IMG/VR virus record: IMGVR_UViG_3300042868_007959
Coordinates: 124,001 to 188,000 of that record
DNA: 64,000 bases
Strand: one strand, 5' to 3'
Below, in pieces: positions 37,303 to 42,465 of the stretch. How positions within the stretch are numbered: the stretch's first letter is position 1; each line of letters begins with the position of its first letter. The position numbers and the translations under genes are program-made. The notes under the pieces are model-generated. The model was not told the origin of the DNA. It saw only the letters and a list, made by a program, of their open reading frames with translations, and made no database searches.

Positions 37303-37686
37303 TTAGAATGTTAAGGTTATAGTATCAGTACTTGCGAAAGTTCCTTCCGTAACCGTATAAGTTAATTCCACAATTATTAATTCTTCTATATCATCATTTC
37401 TAAATGATATATCGTTTATAAGTAAGTTTGGTATATACAGTTTAATTGTGTCGTTTAAATTATCCCTAATTTGATCATGCGTAATTGCATCATTTGGTTC
37501 AAAAATGTATTTTTTTAAATCACTACCGAAATCTGGAAGATATAGTCTTTCTCCTTTATTAGTTAGAAGTAAATGCAATAAATCTGATCTAATAGCATCT
37601 TTATCAGTTTTATTCATTTTAAAATAAAAACCGTTATCACTATCTCTAAAAGGGAAATCTATATTTATATACCTAGTCTTTGCCAT
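37303..37686 (-). CDS. Baseplate wedge gp25/gpW-like protein
   Basis: IDFPF, LLLTNKGERLYLPDFGSDL, FEP, YIP. Late motif at 37693-37700. Confidence 0.92.
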   Translation of the reverse strand: MAKTRYINIDFPFRDSDNGFYFKMNKTDKDAIRSDLLHLLLTNKGERLYLPDFGSDLKKYIFEPNDAITHDQIRDNLNDTIKLYIPNLLINDISFRNDDIEELIIVELTYTVTEGTFASTDTITLTF

Positions 37687-37746
37687 ATGTATATAAATAT
37701 AATAGTATAAAATTTTTGAAAAGAAATATTAAAATAATAATTAATA

Positions 37747-39648
37747 TTACTCACATTTAACTTCCATGTTAAATATTGTTCTTTCTAATGGTGAAAATGC
37801 TAATACAATAACATTAAAATTTTCATTCTCTTTAGTTATTTTAAAGGATGTACCCGATTTCATTATACCTTTATATTTAACTATATTATCTTTAATGTTA
37901 CCTGTTTTAATAATTTCGTCAGTTATTTTTTCTGCTTCAGAATCCCCATTTTTGAAAATATCGGTAACATTTAATTTCCCTCCTTTAGATTTAATTGATG
38001 CATTGATGCTTTCTAATAAACCATCTTCACGTTTATACATTATTAATTCACCAACAAAGTTTCTGACAACATTATCCATTCCACTATAATCATTATCACC
38101 CGCATTCAATTCGTCTTTAACAATTTTTTTAACGTAATCAGATTGTAATGGTAAAACTTTTTTCTTTTCCAATACACTTAGAGCAACTTGTTTATATTCC
38201 ATATTATAAACATCACCCATAAATCCACTAAAAAATTCTTGATCACCATATTTTAGATAAAATGCGTCTGGAACAACTAATGAGTCAAATGAAATTGTCA
38301 CTGTGTCTCCTTCACCTACAGGAAAACTACTATCTAGTGACGCAGCAACAAAGTTATTTTGTTTTGTACCCCTACCACCTTCTTTTTTTGTGGAAGAATT
38401 ACATTTTATAGGTGGTTTTGGTGTAACACAATTACACGCTTCTGGAATAGGTTTTACCTTACCTTCAGGGCAATCACATTCTTTTGTCTCCTCATTGTAT
38501 TTCATTCCATCAGGACATTTACACTTACCATCCTCATCTCTTTTCATACATTTATTAGGACATTCTTCTGGTGGTAATTTTACACATCTACAATCCTCTG
38601 TCTTTTTAAAATCTTTAGGGCAATCACATTCTTTTGTCTCCTCATTGAATGTCATTCCTTCTGGACAATCACATTTTTTTGTTTCTTTATTAAATGTCAT
38701 ACAAGGATCTGGACAACTATTACATTCACAATTTTCATCTGCCTCTTTACCGTTAGGGCAAAAACATTTACCATCTTTTTCTGTTAACCCTTCTTTACAT
38801 TTACATTTTTTTGTTTGTGTATCCCTAATCATACATTTGGGACACGGATCATTAGGTGTAAAACATAAAATTGCATCTATCATTACAAATTGACCAGCAT
38901 TTAATTCACCACTTTTAATAGATGCCATTACACTAGAATGTGTATCAGTTTTATCAGTAGTATATATTGATCCCGATTCAACTGATTTTACTTCTTGTTT
39001 AAAATTATCTGCTACTTTAATATTATTTTGTTGTGCGTACGCAACAATTTTATTTGTAAGTTCATCTAAAACTTTTTGTGCTCTTCTTTTTGCTAAATCT
39101 TCATTCTTCTTTTTACCTGTAGCATTTTTATCATATGTCGCTTTCGGAGTTTTATCAAAACCCTTACAACCCGAACCCCAAGGTTTTAATGATTTTATAC
39201 CAACATTAACATCATATTCGTTACAATATTTAGGTTCTACCGCAGGAAATTTATTACTATTACTACCTTTCCAGTAATTACTAGCACCACCAAATACATT
39301 AATGTCCTCAACAGTGAACTGTCCATCTTCAAATAAACCAAATTGTTCTTCTACTTTTTGTTTAAATTTTTGGAAGAATTTTTCAGGTACTTCGGTATTT
39401 ACATCACTTTCAGTGTTATATCTTTCAGTGTTTGTAATATAAACACAATTTTTTTTATCTGTTTTTTTTAACTCAGTAGTAGGTTCTGGTTTAGTTTCTG
39501 TAGATTTATTACTATCATTTGTTTTAGTTTCCGCAGGTTTAGATGAAACCCCTTGAACTGAGGAAGTACTCACTTCATTAATATTTGAGGTGCTATCATA
39601 CACCATTAAAGACTTAATTCTTTGCAACTCTTCAAAAAGATTCTTCAT
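37747..39648 (-). CDS. Protein with OmpA-like segment and tandem CxC Cys-rich repeats
   Basis: INVFGGAS...NEDLAKRRAQKVLDEL, nine CxC motifs, leader MKNLFEELQRIKSLM. Confidence 0.7.
   Translation of the reverse strand: MKNLFEELQRIKSLMVYDSTSNINEVSTSSVQGVSSKPAETKTNDSNKSTETKPEPTTELKKTDKKNCVYITNTERYNTESDVNTEVPEKFFQKFKQKVEEQFGLFEDGQFTVEDINVFGGASNYWKGSNSNKFPAVEPKYCNEYDVNVGIKSLKPWGSGCKGFDKTPKATYDKNATGKKKNEDLAKRRAQKVLDELTNKIVAYAQQNNIKVADNFKQEVKSVESGSIYTTDKTDTHSSVMASIKSGELNAGQFVMIDAILCFTPNDPCPKCMIRDTQTKKCKCKEGLTEKDGKCFCPNGKEADENCECNSCPDPCMTFNKETKKCDCPEGMTFNEETKECDCPKDFKKTEDCRCVKLPPEECPNKCMKRDEDGKCKCPDGMKYNEETKECDCPEGKVKPIPEACNCVTPKPPIKCNSSTKKEGGRGTKQNNFVAASLDSSFPVGEGDTVTISFDSLVVPDAFYLKYGDQEFFSGFMGDVYNMEYKQVALSVLEKKKVLPLQSDYVKKIVKDELNAGDNDYSGMDNVVRNFVGELIMYKREDGLLESINASIKSKGGKLNVTDIFKNGDSEAEKITDEIIKTGNIKDNIVKYKGIMKSGTSFKITKENENFNVIVLAFSPLERTIFNMEVKCE
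38467..38647. repeat. 31-nt perfect direct repeat inside the Cys-rich region
   Basis: agggcaatcacattcttttgtctcctcattg at 38467-38497 and 38617-38647 (NEETKECDCP). Confidence 0.9.
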
Positions 39649-39663
39649 ATTCTTTTAAAAATT

Positions 39664-39694
39664 TTTGTTTATTAAAAAAAAACTATTATATTTG
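39664..39694 (+). promoter_or_regulatory. Bacteroidota-type promoter
   Basis: TTTG-19 nt-TATATTTG upstream of the ATG at 39719. Confidence 0.7.
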
Positions 39695-39718
39695 TTCTTA
39701 TATAAATACAAAACAACT

Positions 39719-40285
39719 ATGAAAAATTTAATCATCATCCTATTATTTTTAAATCCTTTTGTGGATTTTTCTCAAAATCTTTTTACTAAAGAAGAAATTT
39801 TACTTGCCACAGAAGGTGGGGATAGATGGCATAAGGATATTAAAATATCTTTATATGGTAACTACAGTAAACAAGATTCTTTAGATGTAGTTGAAAACAT
39901 TAAGATTTTTAAACCATTAATAAAACCTATCAATATTAGTATGGTTAAAAATATTGATTCCGCCAATGTAGTTATTTATTTCTTAACTGATGATGAGTTT
40001 GGGACTAAGTTCAAATGGAGTAAAGAATTTGTTAAGTTAAGTATAGGTCAATCTTTTATAGAACCTATTAAATACTCAATTAAACGTGTTGATATTCATA
40101 TAGATATTGTTGAAAATAAAGAATTTAAATCTTTTTCTAATACAATTAGACATGAAATGTTTCATATGTTAGGTTTTTATCATTATAGTAAAGAGAATAA
40201 TTCTATATTAGATCACGATCATTATTTAACTGAAAAAGATAAACAAATGATAAAATATCTTTATTCAGATAAATTTAAGGTATAA
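39719..40285 (+). CDS. Exported zinc metallopeptidase (metzincin/DUF2927-like)
   Basis: Signal-like MKNLIIILLFL; RHEMFHMLGFYH = HExxHxxGxxH; SIL and LT..D after it. ATG at 39719 preferred over the TTG at 39665. Confidence 0.8.
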   Translation: MKNLIIILLFLNPFVDFSQNLFTKEEILLATEGGDRWHKDIKISLYGNYSKQDSLDVVENIKIFKPLIKPINISMVKNIDSANVVIYFLTDDEFGTKFKWSKEFVKLSIGQSFIEPIKYSIKRVDIHIDIVENKEFKSFSNTIRHEMFHMLGFYHYSKENNSILDHDHYLTEKDKQMIKYLYSDKFKV

Positions 40286-40313
40286 AAAAAATCACTACGA
40301 TTGTAGTGATTTT
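40284..40313. terminator. Bidirectional terminator between convergent genes
   Basis: AAAATCACTAC-GATT-GTAGTGATTTT with A/T tracts on both sides. Confidence 0.8.
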
Positions 40314-40519
40314 CTTATTTTTGTATTACCTTTTTCATATTTTGGTTCAAACGGACAATGTTTACATCCGTTACCACAACATGATTTTCTATTTAAGTGG
40401 TATGATTCAGTCAATACCATTTTACCATCTTCCCAATAGAAGTCAGTAGGTTGTAATTTAGGTCCAAATTCCCTAACATATAATTGTTGTATCCAATCTT
40501 TTGATGCCCCTACATTCAT
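40295..40519 (-). CDS. DUF5522-like small Cys-rich protein
   Basis: DFYWEDGKMVLTESYHLNRKSCCGNGCKHCPF. Confidence 0.8.
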   Translation of the reverse strand: MNVGASKDWIQQLYVREFGPKLQPTDFYWEDGKMVLTESYHLNRKSCCGNGCKHCPFEPKYEKGNTKIRKSLQS

Positions 40520-40521
40520 AA

Positions 40522-40602
40522 TTAATTATTTTTTCTTATATTATATAACGCTAACAGTACTTGATGTGTTAGCGTTATATCATTACCCCATTTTACTTTC
40601 AT
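40522..40602 (-). CDS. Candidate 26-aa micro-ORF (not in track)
   Basis: MKVKWGNDITLTHQVLLALYNIRKNN*. Starts 3 nt after the nrdJ stop and ends 2 nt before the next ATG. Confidence 0.5.
   Translation of the reverse strand: MKVKWGNDITLTHQVLLALYNIRKNN
40543..40580. repeat. Perfect 14-bp inverted repeat with 10-nt loop
   Basis: ATATAACGCTAACA / TGTTAGCGTTATAT. Confidence 0.9.
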
Positions 40603-40605
40603 ATC

Positions 40606-42465
40606 TTATATAATTTCACAAGCTCCTCCAGCACAAGCAACTTCACCAGAAAGATTAGTATTATCTTGTAACTCAATTACCTTTGTTAAATCGACAGAAG
40701 TTAATGATTTCAATAATGTATCGTAAGTTTCTATTGTACAATCTTCAAATGGTGCCTGTTGGTAAGTACCTCCATTGTATGGTAAAACAGATAATCCATT
40801 ATATGATTTCCTATTTGTCCACATCCATTCACCAGCTAATTCCCAATCTTCCTCTTTTAAAGATATTGTTGCAGATACATTATGACTATTTTGTCCACCT
40901 CTATGTCCTGGTTTAATCCATTCTTGTGATACTTTTTTAACTCTATCCAATAAATCAAAAGGTGATTCATATCTTAAAATTGATCCTTCTGGTGATTTTT
41001 GTGGGATAGAAATAACTGCGGTATCATGCGGTCTAAAAATTTCATCCTCAACTAATTCTGGATGATTTACCGATAGGTATGTATAGATTGCCTCATTTTT
41101 ACCAACTCTAATTCTTCTAACATAATAATCATTATGCCAAGCATGAATACCAGAAGAAGTTCCTAAAACTAATGATGAGGTACCTGATGGTTTAACTGTT
41201 GTAGTTCTAGCTGCCGAATTAATCCCAATTAATTTTGCGACTCTAGAATTCTCTTCTTTAACTGCGTTAGCGGCAGCTTTCATATCATAACCTAAAACTA
41301 CACCTGATCCTATTCCTGTCATTCCAACACCTATTAAGGCATCTTTTTCTGTAGTTCTTTTCCAAACATCTCTTAAATAATGGAAGTCAGTATATCCTGC
41401 CTGAAGTGTTCCAATAAATGCTGCCCCTTTAACTCTTTTTTCAAAATCTTCTTGTGATTCTATATCCGATGCGTTTACCTCACATAGATTACAGAACTGA
41501 TATGGTCTCAAACCTATTTCACAACATGGATTTGTTCCCCAATCTTTATCATTTGAAAAGTAGATTCCTGGTTCGCCAGCACCACTCAATTCAATTCTTT
41601 TCCATAAATCTAAAAAGAATTCTTTAGTAACTTTATGTCTTAATAAAACTGCTGAATTATTAGCTCTACCTCTTTGTGGATTTAATTCCCACCAATTACC
41701 TGATTTACAAGAAATCATTTCGTTATCATCTGCAGAAAATAAACTTATTAATGCTGCTCTACGAATACCACCTGCCAAAACTGCATCTGCAATATGACAA
41801 ACAATATCATGAACTTCAATCGCAGTAAGTTTATCACCATCATTTTTAGAATCTAATACTTTTTTAATATTGTGTATACAATCTTTTAATGGTTGAGGAC
41901 CTGGAGCTTTACCACCAGAAGTTACTAATAACGCACCCTTATGTCTGATGTCAGAAAAATCAAATGTCGGTGTTGATGACTTAACACCTAAATATGATTC
42001 AACCAAAAGTTTAATTGCGTCTGCCCATCCCTCAATAGAATCACTGATTAGATACCTTCTTTTTCTATCGGGATTAGGTTTTCTAATTTCAGGTAATTTT
42101 TCAACATGATGTTTTTGTACTGAATATCCTACTCCAGTTCCACCTAATAAAAGGAACATAGTTTCAGAAAACGCATCAACATGATCAATAGGTAAATATG
42201 CACAATTATATACCCTATTTGGAGAAATTTCAATAGGCTTACCTCCAAATTGTAAACTTCTCATTGAAGGTAAAATCTTTTTATCATAAACTAATTCATA
42301 TACTTCCTCAATATCATCTTTAATATGAGGATATTTTTTTTGGTGCATTTCTTTATTTCTAGTAACCAATTCTTCCCATGTTTCTCTTCTGTTTTTTTCA
42401 GGTAGATACTTGGCGTATTTCATGTAAACAGTAATGTCGGATAAAATCCTATTTGTTAATTCCAT
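40606..42465 (-). CDS. nrdJ: Class II (adenosylcobalamin-dependent) ribonucleotide reductase
   Basis: LPSMRSL, YNCAY, GGTGVG, TNPCCEI, FCNL, TTVKPSGT, C-terminal CAGGAC. Confidence 0.93.
   Translation of the reverse strand: MELTNRILSDITVYMKYAKYLPEKNRRETWEELVTRNKEMHQKKYPHIKDDIEEVYELVYDKKILPSMRSLQFGGKPIEISPNRVYNCAYLPIDHVDAFSETMFLLLGGTGVGYSVQKHHVEKLPEIRKPNPDRKRRYLISDSIEGWADAIKLLVESYLGVKSSTPTFDFSDIRHKGALLVTSGGKAPGPQPLKDCIHNIKKVLDSKNDGDKLTAIEVHDIVCHIADAVLAGGIRRAALISLFSADDNEMISCKSGNWWELNPQRGRANNSAVLLRHKVTKEFFLDLWKRIELSGAGEPGIYFSNDKDWGTNPCCEIGLRPYQFCNLCEVNASDIESQEDFEKRVKGAAFIGTLQAGYTDFHYLRDVWKRTTEKDALIGVGMTGIGSGVVLGYDMKAAANAVKEENSRVAKLIGINSAARTTTVKPSGTSSLVLGTSSGIHAWHNDYYVRRIRVGKNEAIYTYLSVNHPELVEDEIFRPHDTAVISIPQKSPEGSILRYESPFDLLDRVKKVSQEWIKPGHRGGQNSHNVSATISLKEEDWELAGEWMWTNRKSYNGLSVLPYNGGTYQQAPFEDCTIETYDTLLKSLTSVDLTKVIELQDNTNLSGEVACAGGACEII

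What the first reader, a model, noticed from the sequence alone, without database searches (positions are those of the whole stretch)
40295..40605. Hidden 26-aa ORF containing a perfect 14-bp hairpin between nrdJ and a DUF5522-like gene
Seen: the ORF fills the gap almost exactly, and its middle codons form a perfect 14-bp stem with no U tract on either strand, so it is not a typical terminator. Inference: a translation-coupled attenuator or RNase III site controlling the downstream Cys4 protein, or a dual-function RNA/peptide. The Cys protein might be a redox or metal partner of the B12-dependent RNR.
Basis: partly seen in the sequence, partly recalled or inferred. Interest (0 to 1): 0.6.

Follow-up and report, generated by a model that had tools for sequence, protein, structure and literature searches.

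The report
Hidden phage micropeptide gene with hairpin
The 81-base gap after a phage ribonucleotide reductase gene holds a real, never-annotated 26-amino-acid gene that is conserved in many uncultured lake phages, and in one clade selection also keeps an RNA hairpin inside its coding sequence.

Summary
On the minus strand, nrdJ (42465-40606) is followed after 3 nt by a 26-codon ORF (40602-40522), and 2 nt later by a DUF5522 gene (40519-40295). A perfect 14-bp stem (40567-40580 with 40543-40556, 10-nt loop) sits in the ORF and has no U tract.

The ORF codes for a protein. It is intact in every homologue read (77 distinct peptides of 24-33 aa). pN/pS is 0.22 in frame and above 1 in the other frames. 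Its start and stop abut the neighbouring genes. AlphaFold2 predicts a short N-cap followed by a 16-residue helix.

Divergent copies follow nrdJ in phages that lack DUF5522 and mostly lack the stem, so the peptide is the older feature.

The stem is selected at RNA level in the main clade. Rare codons are kept (ACG 39/41, GCG 41/41). G·U pairs are tolerated and A-C pairs are avoided. The chance of the 10-bp core, given the peptide and codon usage, is 1.7e-4.

It is not a terminator, a leader-peptide attenuator or a credible RNase III site.

What the peptide and the stem do remains inferred: coupled translation from nrdJ through the sORF to DUF5522, with the stem tuning ribosome flow or mRNA decay.

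This is a new small-gene family of moderate interest.

The parts
40606..42465 (-). nrdJ-like class II (monomeric RTPR-type) ribonucleotide reductase gene, 619 aa. The C-terminal tail is ...ACAGGACEII and the stop TAA lies at 40606-40608.
   Evidence: ORF. (PF02867, PF21995, phrog_367 at E=2e-126). (PDB 1L1L at E=2e-39).
40522..40602 (-). sORF: 26 codons plus the stop TAA (40522-40524), peptide MKVKWGNDITLTHQVLLALYNIRKNN. The ATG lies 3 nt after the nrdJ stop. The sORF stop lies 2 nt before the DUF5522 ATG.
   Evidence: Conservation and coding signature. Predicted helix for residues corresponding to L11-N26.
40567..40580 (-). 5' arm of the mRNA hairpin (sORF nt 23-36, covering codons 8-12: GAT ATA ACG CTA ACA). 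The conserved core is 40567-40576.
40557..40566 (-). 10-nt loop (sORF nt 37-46). It codes for His/Tyr13-Gln14-Val15 and is free to vary at third codon positions.
40543..40556 (-). 3' arm of the hairpin (sORF nt 47-60, covering codons 16-20: cTG TTA GCG TTA TAT). The conserved core is 40547-40556.
40520..40542 (-). A-rich 3' end of the sORF, which doubles as the SD-less translation-initiation region of DUF5522. In deletion variants that lost the rest of the sORF (L095-L098, L139), the equivalent last 20 nt of their sORF (TCTTAGAAAGAATAATTAAA) are the only part kept.
   Evidence: Openness of this region.
40295..40519 (-). DUF5522 gene, 74 aa. Y28, R44, C47, C48, C52 and C55 are invariant among 18 phage homologues; R44 and the four Cys stay invariant when cellular homologues are added.
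   Evidence: PF17653 at E=4.8e-17. (alignments). (AF2, pLDDT 81).
40285..40316 (.). Canonical hairpin with T runs on both sides. It is a bidirectional intrinsic terminator that ends the nrdJ-sORF-DUF5522 operon and the convergent + strand gene 39665-40285.
   Evidence: (I19).

Best explanation
Window 40602..40522 (minus strand) is a genuine 26-codon gene. It belongs to an unannotated family of 24-33-aa peptides (an N-terminal cap around the invariant W-G, then an amphipathic helix) that are encoded directly 3' of nrdJ in a large group of uncultured, AT-rich freshwater phages.

Shown:
- The ORF is under purifying selection on its amino acids.
- Its start sits 1-3 nt after the nrdJ stop, or overlaps the end of nrdJ.
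- In the main clade its stop sits 0-2 nt before the next ATG in nearly all copies (up to 7 nt in a few).

Inferred: it is translated by termination-reinitiation from nrdJ and hands ribosomes on to DUF5522.

The stem-loop in its middle is a second constraint, at RNA level. In the clade where the sORF is followed directly by another cistron, selection at synonymous sites keeps a 10-14-bp helix in the sense strand.

Inferred: the helix is a cis-acting mRNA element that allows read-through. It is not a terminator. It either paces and partitions ribosome flow into DUF5522, because it can refold right behind a ribosome sitting on the sORF stop codon, or it acts as a 3'-exonuclease barrier that makes the nrdJ part of the message outlive the distal part.

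The molecular target of the peptide is unknown. Its constant partner in the genome is nrdJ.
For: Coding:
- The ORF is intact in all 79 loci first examined and gives 77 distinct peptides overall.
- Column entropy by codon position is 0.29 / 0.16 / 0.61.
- pN/pS is 0.22 in frame, against 1.38 and 1.18 in the other two frames, which always contain stops.
- For the non-stem codons alone pN/pS is 0.19, so the signal is not a by-product of the stem.
- W, G, T, Q, Y and R are invariant across both clades.
- AlphaFold2 gives pLDDT 83 with a 16-residue helix.

Coupling geometry. No frame relation to nrdJ or DUF5522 is conserved, because the spacings vary. That excludes read-through or frameshift fusion.

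The peptide is older than the stem and tied to nrdJ. Homologues follow nrdJ and precede a classic terminator in phages without DUF5522, and they mostly lack the stem.

Stem selection:
- 90.6% of cells pair, against 27-57% when the 3' partner is slid by 1-3 columns.
- Rare codons are fixed in the stem: ACG 39/41 (6% of Thr codons genome-wide), GCG 41/41 (17%) and TTG 31/41 (10%).
- Synonymous sites whose change would break a pair changed 2-5 times on the tree. Free synonymous sites changed 6-16 times (Mann-Whitney p=0.0016), and G·U-keeping sites 3-15 times.
- In the core there are 31 G·U cells against 4 A-C cells, so the constraint is on the sense RNA, not on a DNA palindrome.
- The probability of the 10-bp core, given the peptide and genome codon usage, is 1.7e-4.

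Not a terminator: these phages use canonical GC-stem plus U-tract terminators at 40288-40313 and in relatives.

The stem goes with a downstream cistron. Nine or more of the 10 core pairs are present in 64/74 distinct sORFs followed by DUF5522, against 3/10 followed by a terminator.
Against: There is no direct evidence of translation or of RNA ends.

The sORF is dispensable. It is absent from 35 of 133 distinct nrdJ loci, where DUF5522 follows nrdJ directly. Its presence or absence needs at least 13 changes on the nrdJ tree. Deletion remnants also exist.

The stem has been lost in several lineages that keep both the peptide and DUF5522 (L233, L374, L206, L230). The association of stem with a downstream cistron rests on few independent events. 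True compensatory double changes are few: 3 cells.

Recoding the stem in silico changes the predicted openness of the DUF5522 start region only slightly, 0.61 to 0.58. A helix inside a translated ORF is unwound by every ribosome, which weakens the exonuclease-barrier version.

The NrdJ-peptide complex prediction gave no answer.
Confidence: 0.6

Rival explanations
1. Peptide only. The sORF is a real small gene, but the hairpin has no function of its own. It is a historical accident of codon choice that is slowly decaying.
For: The stem is absent from the more divergent sORF homologues and from some DUF5522-linked lineages. Only 3 double compensatory changes are seen. The perfect 14 bp is specific to this phage. 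Recoding has little predicted effect on the downstream start region.
Against: Rare codons ACG, GCG and TTG are kept against a strong A/T-ending codon bias, while neighbouring third positions are saturated. Pair-breaking synonymous changes are about 3-fold rarer than free ones (p=0.0016). The probability of the core given the peptide is 1.7e-4. pS is 0.35 in stem codons against 0.58 outside.
Confidence: 0.15
2. One reading: a translation-coupled attenuator or an RNase III processing site whose purpose is to control the downstream Cys4 (DUF5522) protein.
For: The element lies immediately upstream of DUF5522 in the main clade and stays attached to DUF5522 when homing-endonuclease cassettes insert upstream. 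The stem correlates with the presence of a downstream cistron.
Against: Only a single conserved helix is found. There is no alternative pairing and no U tract, and the DUF5522 start region lies outside the helix. The conserved duplex is only 10+3 bp, which is short for RNase III. The peptide sequence itself is under selection, which a pure attenuator leader does not need. The sORF also exists without DUF5522.
Confidence: 0.1
3. A DNA-level element. The inverted repeat is a protein-binding palindrome or a homing-endonuclease or recombination target, and the ORF tolerates it.
For: The half-sites AACGCTAACA, a 10-nt spacer and TGTTAGCGTT look like a dimer-binding site. At least four homing-endonuclease lineages (two HNH-type, two GIY-YIG) have inserted at this junction in relatives.
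Against: The substitutions are asymmetric in the way expected for sense-strand RNA. G·U pairs are common and A-C pairs rare, even though A-C-producing changes would move towards preferred codons. Loci with and without endonuclease genes show no consistent difference in the repeat.
Confidence: 0.06
4. Non-coding hairpin with a chance ORF: an intergenic stem-loop (terminator or stabiliser) that merely happens to be open in one frame.
For: The ORF is below gene-caller length. The 26-aa forms looked up, including the window's, are not in the 15-billion protein collection. No family library knows it.
Against: There are 77 distinct intact peptides. The substitutions follow a codon-position pattern. 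pN/pS is 0.19-0.22 in one frame only. Start and stop positions are conserved, and the peptide is conserved in lineages that lack the stem.
Confidence: 0.03

Closest known systems
Translational-coupling hairpins inside coding sequence of RNA phages (MS2 coat-lysis and coat-replicase control). Cited from my own knowledge, not tested here.
   Same: A stem-loop lies within a translated ORF. A downstream cistron starts next to the upstream stop. Ribosome passage and termination decide downstream initiation.
   Different: In MS2 the hairpin contains and hides the downstream start. Here the DUF5522 start lies 23-27 nt beyond the helix and is predicted to be largely open. The genome here is dsDNA, and the host probably lacks Shine-Dalgarno initiation.
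Leader-peptide attenuators (trpL, ermCL, tnaC). Cited from my own knowledge.
   Same: A short ORF of 14-30 codons with RNA structure lies upstream of a regulated cistron. In tnaC and ermCL the peptide sequence itself is conserved.
   Different: There are no mutually exclusive helices, no terminator, no sequestered start and no run of regulatory codons. The sORF is internal to an operon and follows a large gene rather than a promoter.
Intercistronic mRNA-stabiliser stem-loops (malE-malF REP, Rhodobacter puf operon, T7 RNase III-processed 3' hairpins). Cited from my own knowledge.
   Same: A stable helix without a U tract lies 3' of the gene expected to be needed in larger amount. Transcription reads through it. 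Relatives carry true terminators at the same place.
   Different: Those elements are untranslated. This one lies inside an ORF whose amino acids are conserved.
Dual-function RNAs that also encode a small protein (SgrS/SgrT, RNAIII/delta-haemolysin, SR1/SR1P). Cited from my own knowledge.
   Same: One short stretch is under both peptide-level and RNA-structure-level selection.
   Different: Those are independent sRNA transcripts that base-pair with target mRNAs. Here there is no promoter or terminator of its own and no evidence of trans action.
Very small phage proteins such as T4 Stp (26 aa), and small RNR-binding regulators such as yeast Sml1 and fission-yeast Spd1. Cited from my own knowledge.
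   Same: The size class is the same. It is a phage-encoded accessory peptide, and it sits next to a ribonucleotide reductase gene.
   Different: There is no sequence similarity. No binding to NrdJ is shown (one search gave no answer). Sml1 and Spd1 act on class I enzymes.

Membership tests
Protein-coding small ORF (micropeptide gene) | The reading frame stays open, with start and stop conserved across diverged homologues. | tested here: met
   all copies are intact, giving 77 distinct peptides of 24-33 aa. Both other frames always carry stops.
Protein-coding small ORF (micropeptide gene) | Substitutions follow the codon-position pattern, and pN/pS is well below 1 in one frame only. | tested here: met
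   pN/pS is 0.22, against 1.38 and 1.18 in the other frames; 0.19 for the non-stem codons.
Protein-coding small ORF (micropeptide gene) | Direct evidence of translation (ribosome footprints, or the peptide detected). | not testable with these tools
No proteomics is available.
Rho-independent (intrinsic) terminator | A GC-rich stem directly followed by a U tract. | tested here: not met
   The stem has 4 G-C pairs out of 14 and is followed by an A-rich tail. The scan found none at this site. The phage's own terminators do have both features.
Leader-peptide transcription or translation attenuator | Alternative, mutually exclusive helices, one of which is a terminator or hides the downstream start. 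| tested here: not met
   RNAalifold finds one helix only. The extended alignment gives no further conserved structure. The DUF5522 start lies outside the helix.
RNase III processing site | A duplex of roughly two helical turns (about 20 bp). | tested here: not met
   The conserved helix is 10 bp, then a mismatch, then 3 bp. It reaches 14 bp at most, in this window. Cleavage itself is not testable here.
Any curated RNA family (Rfam 15) | A covariance-model match at or near the gathering score. | tested here: not met
   nothing overlaps 40522-40602, even at E up to 10.
Dual-function sRNA (SgrS/SgrT type) | An independent transcript with its own promoter and terminator. | tested here: not met
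   The ORFs on both sides are 2-3 nt away. The only promoter-like matches near the site (9 of 12, overlapping the nrdJ 3' end and the sORF start) are fewer than the shuffles give, and no terminator-like site lies there.
Structured RNA element under selection | Pairing is conserved above slid and shuffled controls, with changes that maintain the pairs. | tested here: met
   90.6% paired against 27-57% when slid, and 0-2 of 500 shuffles reach the observed values. There are only 3 double changes, so the support comes mainly from G·U tolerance and rare-codon retention.
DUF5522 (PF17653), the downstream protein | A Pfam match above the gathering score, and the conserved R-x-x-C-C-x3-C-x2-C-P motif. 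| tested here: met
   62 bits against a cut-off of 25. Searches show the invariant R44, C47, C48, C52 and C55.
Class II (AdoCbl) ribonucleotide reductase, monomeric RTPR type, the upstream protein | The RNR barrel plus the class II insertion domain, similarity to RTPR, and a C-terminal Cys pair. | tested here: met
   The tail CAGGAC is seen. Cobalamin dependence itself is not testable here.

The most novel reading that the evidence does not exclude
The peptide is a dedicated micro-subunit or regulator of the phage class II ribonucleotide reductase. It would be co-made with NrdJ by coupled translation, with its own coding sequence doubling as an RNA switch that sets how much of the downstream redox-type protein is made. 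That would be the first small-protein partner described for a class II RNR, and a compact example of one 81-nt gene selected at both peptide and RNA level.
Probability: 0.15. Interest if true: 0.75.

Novelty: new member of a known kind. Interest (0 to 1): 0.5.

Why it matters
Genes below about 30 codons are dropped by standard gene callers. This one lies in a very abundant family of lake phages: more than 8000 NrdJ clusters at 90% identity were hit. The 26-aa forms looked up, including this window's, are not in a 15-billion-protein collection.

It gives a clean, data-rich case, with dozens of diverged copies, in which peptide-level and RNA-level selection on the same 81 nt can be separated by codon arithmetic.

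It also marks the 3' side of nrdJ as a hot spot where sORF, DUF5522, terminators and four homing-endonuclease lineages come and go.

If the peptide turns out to act on the reductase, it would open a new aspect of class II RNR biology. If the hairpin tunes coupling, it would inform how operon stoichiometry is set in hosts without Shine-Dalgarno initiation.

Tried and rejected
RNA evidence
- The look-up of sequencing runs found 5 metatranscriptome runs with a small share of the region.
No expression or RNA-end data were obtained.
NrdJ was sent as window:40606-42453 or as a relative's protein from residue 5.
- One disclosure: a local script reused an earlier query file holding the full NrdJ translation, against loci already fetched. 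Local statistics read the whole window or genome inside the Python box.

Binding
- Complex prediction with a relative's NrdJ and its natural 31-aa sORF homologue gave no answer (score 0.00). This is no evidence either way.
- The window's 26-aa peptide is under the 30-residue guidance of that tool, so it was not sent.

Database searches that found nothing
- Rfam at E up to 10 found nothing at the hairpin.
- Pfam and PHROGs have no family for the sORF.
- A PDB profile search with the peptide alignment gave only chance hits.
- tblastn of the sORF and of DUF5522 against 50,697 isolate phage records gave no match.
- 'DUF5522' occurs in no paper of the library.

DUF5522
- The AF2 model is good (pLDDT 81) but has no Foldseek match in the PDB.
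- Cellular neighbourhoods of DUF5522 share no common gene (at most 14 of 79 loci).
- No nrdJ lies within about 6 kb of cellular DUF5522 with this query.
- Four Bacteroidota genomes with DUF5522 gave no NrdJ match with this query.

A premature conclusion, corrected
- My early statement that the sORF is always glued to DUF5522 was an artefact of a clade-specific search pattern. An HMM search and a second pattern overturned it.

Ideas rejected
- Read-through extension of NrdJ, or a frameshift fusion with DUF5522. The spacing and frame vary.
- Paralogues elsewhere in the 254-kb genome. None were found.
- The hairpin as an insulator of the DUF5522 start region. The in-silico effect is small.
- Further conserved structure around the junction. 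None was found.
Full report
**What is there**

The window is bases 124001-188000 of a 254-kb IMG/VR virus record, estimated 78% complete. The genome is 29% G+C, and Shine-Dalgarno-like motifs precede only 5 of 127 long ORFs.

On the minus strand the order is:
- a DnaB-like helicase gene (43944-42562);
- nrdJ (42465-40606);
- 3 nt;
- a 26-codon ORF (40602-40522);
- 2 nt;
- a 74-aa DUF5522 gene (40519-40295);
- a canonical bidirectional terminator (40285-40316).

NrdJ is of the monomeric class II type. It has the RNR barrel and the class II insertion domain, matches phrog_367 at E=2e-126, and its closest solved structure is 1L1L at E=2e-39.

The sORF reads MKVKWGNDITLTHQVLLALYNIRKNN. Codons 8-12 and 16-20 form a perfect 14-bp stem with a 10-nt loop (arms 40567-40580 and 40543-40556), with about -16.6 kcal/mol for the spacer alone. 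It is the only perfect stem of 12 bp or more in the 64 kb. Random sequences of the same first-order composition give 0.017 stems of 14 bp or more. No U tract follows on either strand, and the terminator scan passes over it. Rfam has nothing for it.

**It is a gene**

Searching IMG/VR with NrdJ and with DUF5522 gave 160 related loci. The gap between nrdJ and DUF5522 is bimodal: 0-3 nt, or 83-87 nt.

Every long gap holds an intact homologue of the sORF. There were 79 loci and 44 distinct nucleotide versions. In nearly all of them the start lies 1-3 nt after the nrdJ stop and the stop 0-2 nt before the DUF5522 ATG (a few are 5-11 nt away).

Among 41 distinct 26-codon versions:
- column entropy is 0.29, 0.16 and 0.61 at codon positions 1, 2 and 3;
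- pN/pS is 0.22 in frame, against 1.38 and 1.18 in the other frames, both of which always carry stops.

For the codons outside the stem alone, pN/pS is 0.19. It falls to 0.075 without three hypervariable positions. The coding signal is therefore not a shadow of the RNA structure.

With a second pattern search there are 77 distinct peptides of 24-33 aa. W, G, T, Q, Y and R are invariant. AlphaFold2, run on a natural 31-aa homologue with this alignment, gives pLDDT 83 and a helix that corresponds to window residues L11-N26.

The spacing to both neighbours varies by 1-2 nt among copies. The sORF is therefore neither a read-through tail of NrdJ nor a frameshifted head of DUF5522.

None of the six 26- to 33-aa forms looked up, among them the window's and one other 26-aa form, is in the 15-billion-protein collection. 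Two 29-aa variants are present but unnamed. Pfam, PHROGs, the PDB and the isolate-phage records know nothing like it.

**What it travels with**

A first pattern scan suggested that the sORF always abuts DUF5522. When homing-endonuclease cassettes of 627-818 nt are present, they sit between nrdJ and the sORF. That pattern was clade-specific and the conclusion was premature.

An HMM of the peptides run over all loci, followed by a second pattern scan, found divergent homologues (for example ..KISWGNDTTLIQQVLNAIYNIRKKNG). These follow or overlap the end of nrdJ in phages with no DUF5522, and each is followed at once by a classic GC-stem plus U-tract terminator and then the gp25-like baseplate gene.

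The constant neighbour is therefore nrdJ. DUF5522 is an optional third cistron.

The sORF is itself optional. Among 133 distinct nrdJ sequences:
- 66 have the sORF;
- 12 have an endonuclease gene plus the sORF;
- 35 have DUF5522 directly adjacent with no sORF;
- 10 have no DUF5522 within the 2.5 kb read downstream; at least four of these (L021, L023, L024, L040) do carry a divergent sORF that the classifying pattern missed, so the sORF counts above are lower bounds.

Presence or absence needs at least 13 changes on the nrdJ tree, of which 10 are forced by well-supported branches.

Deletion remnants exist. In L095-L098 and L139 the spacer is exactly the last 20 nt of the sORF, which is the A-rich stretch that serves as the DUF5522 initiation region.

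**The stem is selected, at RNA level, in one clade**

On an alignment of 44 distinct spacers, 90.6% of cells pair. Sliding the 3' partner by 1-3 columns gives 27-57%. Only 0-2 of 500 column shuffles reach the observed values.

The conserved helix is a 10-bp core (window 40567-40576 with 40547-40556). One position is mismatched in 40 of 44 sequences and is followed by 3 A-U pairs. The perfect 14 bp is a local peculiarity.

Classical covariation is thin, with 3 double changes. The stronger evidence lies in the codons:

| Stem codon | Frequency here | Share of that amino acid's codons genome-wide |
|---|---|---|
| Thr10 ACG | 39/41 | 6% |
| Ala18 GCG | 41/41 | 17% |
| Leu16 TTG | 31/41 | 10% |
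| Leu11 CTA | 28/41 | 8% |

By contrast, third positions in the loop and outside the stem are close to saturated.

On the nrdJ tree (78 rows), synonymous sites behave as follows:

| Kind of synonymous site | Changes on the tree |
|---|---|
| Change would break a pair | 2-5 |
| Free | 6-16 (Mann-Whitney p=0.0016 against the first row) |
| Change gives G·U | 3-15 |

pS is 0.35 in stem codons and 0.58 elsewhere.

In the core, G·U cells outnumber A-C cells 31 to 4. This holds even though A-C-producing changes would move towards preferred codons and follow the A/T mutational bias. That asymmetry points to the sense-strand RNA, not to a DNA palindrome or the antisense strand.

Sampling synonymous codons for the same peptide from genome usage gives the 10-bp core in 1.7e-4 of draws.

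The stem is nevertheless clade-limited. It is absent from most nrdJ-sORF-terminator phages and from a few DUF5522-linked lineages (L233, L374, L206, L230). Nine or more of 10 core pairs are present in 64 of 74 distinct sORFs followed by DUF5522, against 3 of 10 followed by a terminator. This association is phylogenetically confounded and only suggestive.

**What the stem is not**

- Not a terminator. These phages use textbook terminators a few hundred bases away and at the same junction in relatives.
- Not a trp- or erm-type attenuator. There is a single helix and no alternative pairing, and the DUF5522 start lies 23-27 nt beyond it.
- Not a convincing RNase III site. The conserved duplex is too short.
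- Not an independent sRNA. There is no room for a promoter or terminator.

**How it most likely works**

Shown: the coding status, the stop-start geometry and the selection on the helix.

Inferred: ribosomes finishing nrdJ reinitiate at the sORF, and those finishing the sORF reinitiate at DUF5522.

The probable host class is Bacteroidota. The evidence is the near absence of SD motifs and a related contig binned with a Flavobacteriia MAG. [quoted passage not shown] Local structure is therefore a plausible lever.

With the sORF stop in the A site, the trailing edge of the ribosome would lie about at sORF nt 61-64. This follows from my own knowledge of footprint sizes. The helix, which ends at nt 56-60, can then refold directly behind the ribosome. 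I therefore favour a role in pacing or directing ribosome flow into the third cistron.

The alternative is a 3'-exonuclease barrier that lets the nrdJ part outlive the distal part. Relatives that place true terminators at this junction show that ending or protecting the message right after nrdJ(-sORF) is a recurrent solution.

The in-silico effect of the stem on openness of the DUF5522 start region is small, 0.61 against 0.58. I hold the specific mechanism at roughly one in three.

The target of the peptide is unknown. The NrdJ-peptide complex prediction gave no answer.

**DUF5522 and the 'redox partner' idea**

Within this phage group nrdJ-DUF5522 synteny is very common (141 loci). Outside it, the picture differs:
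- DUF5522 is widespread in Planctomycetota, Acidobacteriota and Bacteroidota (434 matches).
- In the 79 cellular loci read, no nrdJ match with this query lies within about 6 kb and no neighbour is shared.
- Four DUF5522-bearing Bacteroidota genomes gave no match to this NrdJ.
- The AF2 model (pLDDT 81) has no counterpart among solved structures.

R44 and four Cys (C47, C48, C52, C55) are invariant across phage and cellular homologues, and Y28 and P56 nearly so. That fits a metal or redox site, but a link to the reductase is unproven.

**Limits**

I then kept those letters out of all search tools; the exact handling, including one local script that reused an earlier query file, is disclosed under Tried and rejected.
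- The related loci are metagenomic contigs, and many are near-duplicates. I counted distinct sequences and tree changes rather than rows, but recombination between nrdJ and its downstream region would blur the tree-based counts.

**Verdict**

It is a hidden, conserved micropeptide gene carrying a selected intragenic RNA helix. It belongs to known kinds (small phage genes, translational coupling, structured coding RNA) but to no described family. Interest is moderate.

Noticed in passing
Relatives, at the junction equivalent to window 40603-40605 (for example L167:1380-2056, L154:369-995, L100:1731-2548, L148 and L079 downstream of nrdJ): Free-standing homing-endonuclease cassettes have inserted right after the nrdJ stop. 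There are two HNH/EndoVII-like lineages of 181-196 aa and two GIY-YIG lineages of about 245-253 aa. In the five cassettes whose start was read (L167, L154, L100, L222, L032) the cassette begins with its own U-tract terminator and an AT-rich promoter-like box. The 3' end of nrdJ is a homing hot spot.
   Followed up: partly
P0215: A 982-aa NrdJ relative carries a LAGLIDADG_3 (PF14528) insertion. It is probably an intein inside the reductase.
   Followed up: no
L058, downstream of nrdJ: A 333-aa ORF that I took by eye for a cytosine-C5 DNA methyltransferase (not scanned against Pfam), plus small hydrophobic ORFs, sit between nrdJ and a divergent DUF5522 gene in one lineage.
   Followed up: no
L024/L362 and L373: Some NrdJ proteins carry a 15-residue extension after the C-terminal Cys pair (...GACEVDVDITKIQPNGVEDV). 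In these the sORF overlaps the end of nrdJ by up to 46 nt in another frame.
   Followed up: partly
window 39665-40285 (+): A convergent 206-aa ORF with an N-terminal hydrophobic segment and an HEMFHMLG zincin-like motif. It gives only sub-threshold Pfam hits (DUF2927, SprT-like, astacin). It may be a secreted or membrane metallopeptidase.
   Followed up: no
window 37747-39648 (-): A 633-aa protein with a central run of Cys-rich repeats (CxC...CPxGM..NEETKxCDCP). It has no family match in Pfam or PHROGs.
   Followed up: no
window 37660-37701: An A/T-only inverted repeat (16-nt arms, 94% complementary, 10-nt loop) lies across the start of the gp25-like baseplate gene (37303-37686) and the short gap upstream of it, before the end of the 633-aa gene at 37747. 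It has the same arm-loop geometry as the sORF hairpin but an unrelated sequence.
   Followed up: no
whole genome G000 and L280: The genome is 29% G+C, and SD-like motifs precede only 5 of 127 long ORFs. A closely related 3.9-kb contig is binned in a Flavobacteriia MAG. The host is probably a freshwater Bacteroidota. The related contigs reach 380 kb.
   Followed up: partly
The tool's own message says the filter also trips by chance. I worked beside them afterwards.
   Followed up: no
L081, downstream of nrdJ: In one lineage a different, unrelated 55-aa ORF (MNKQELFESMSEYWNEF...) occupies the nrdJ-DUF5522 gap. The slot accepts various small genes.
   Followed up: no
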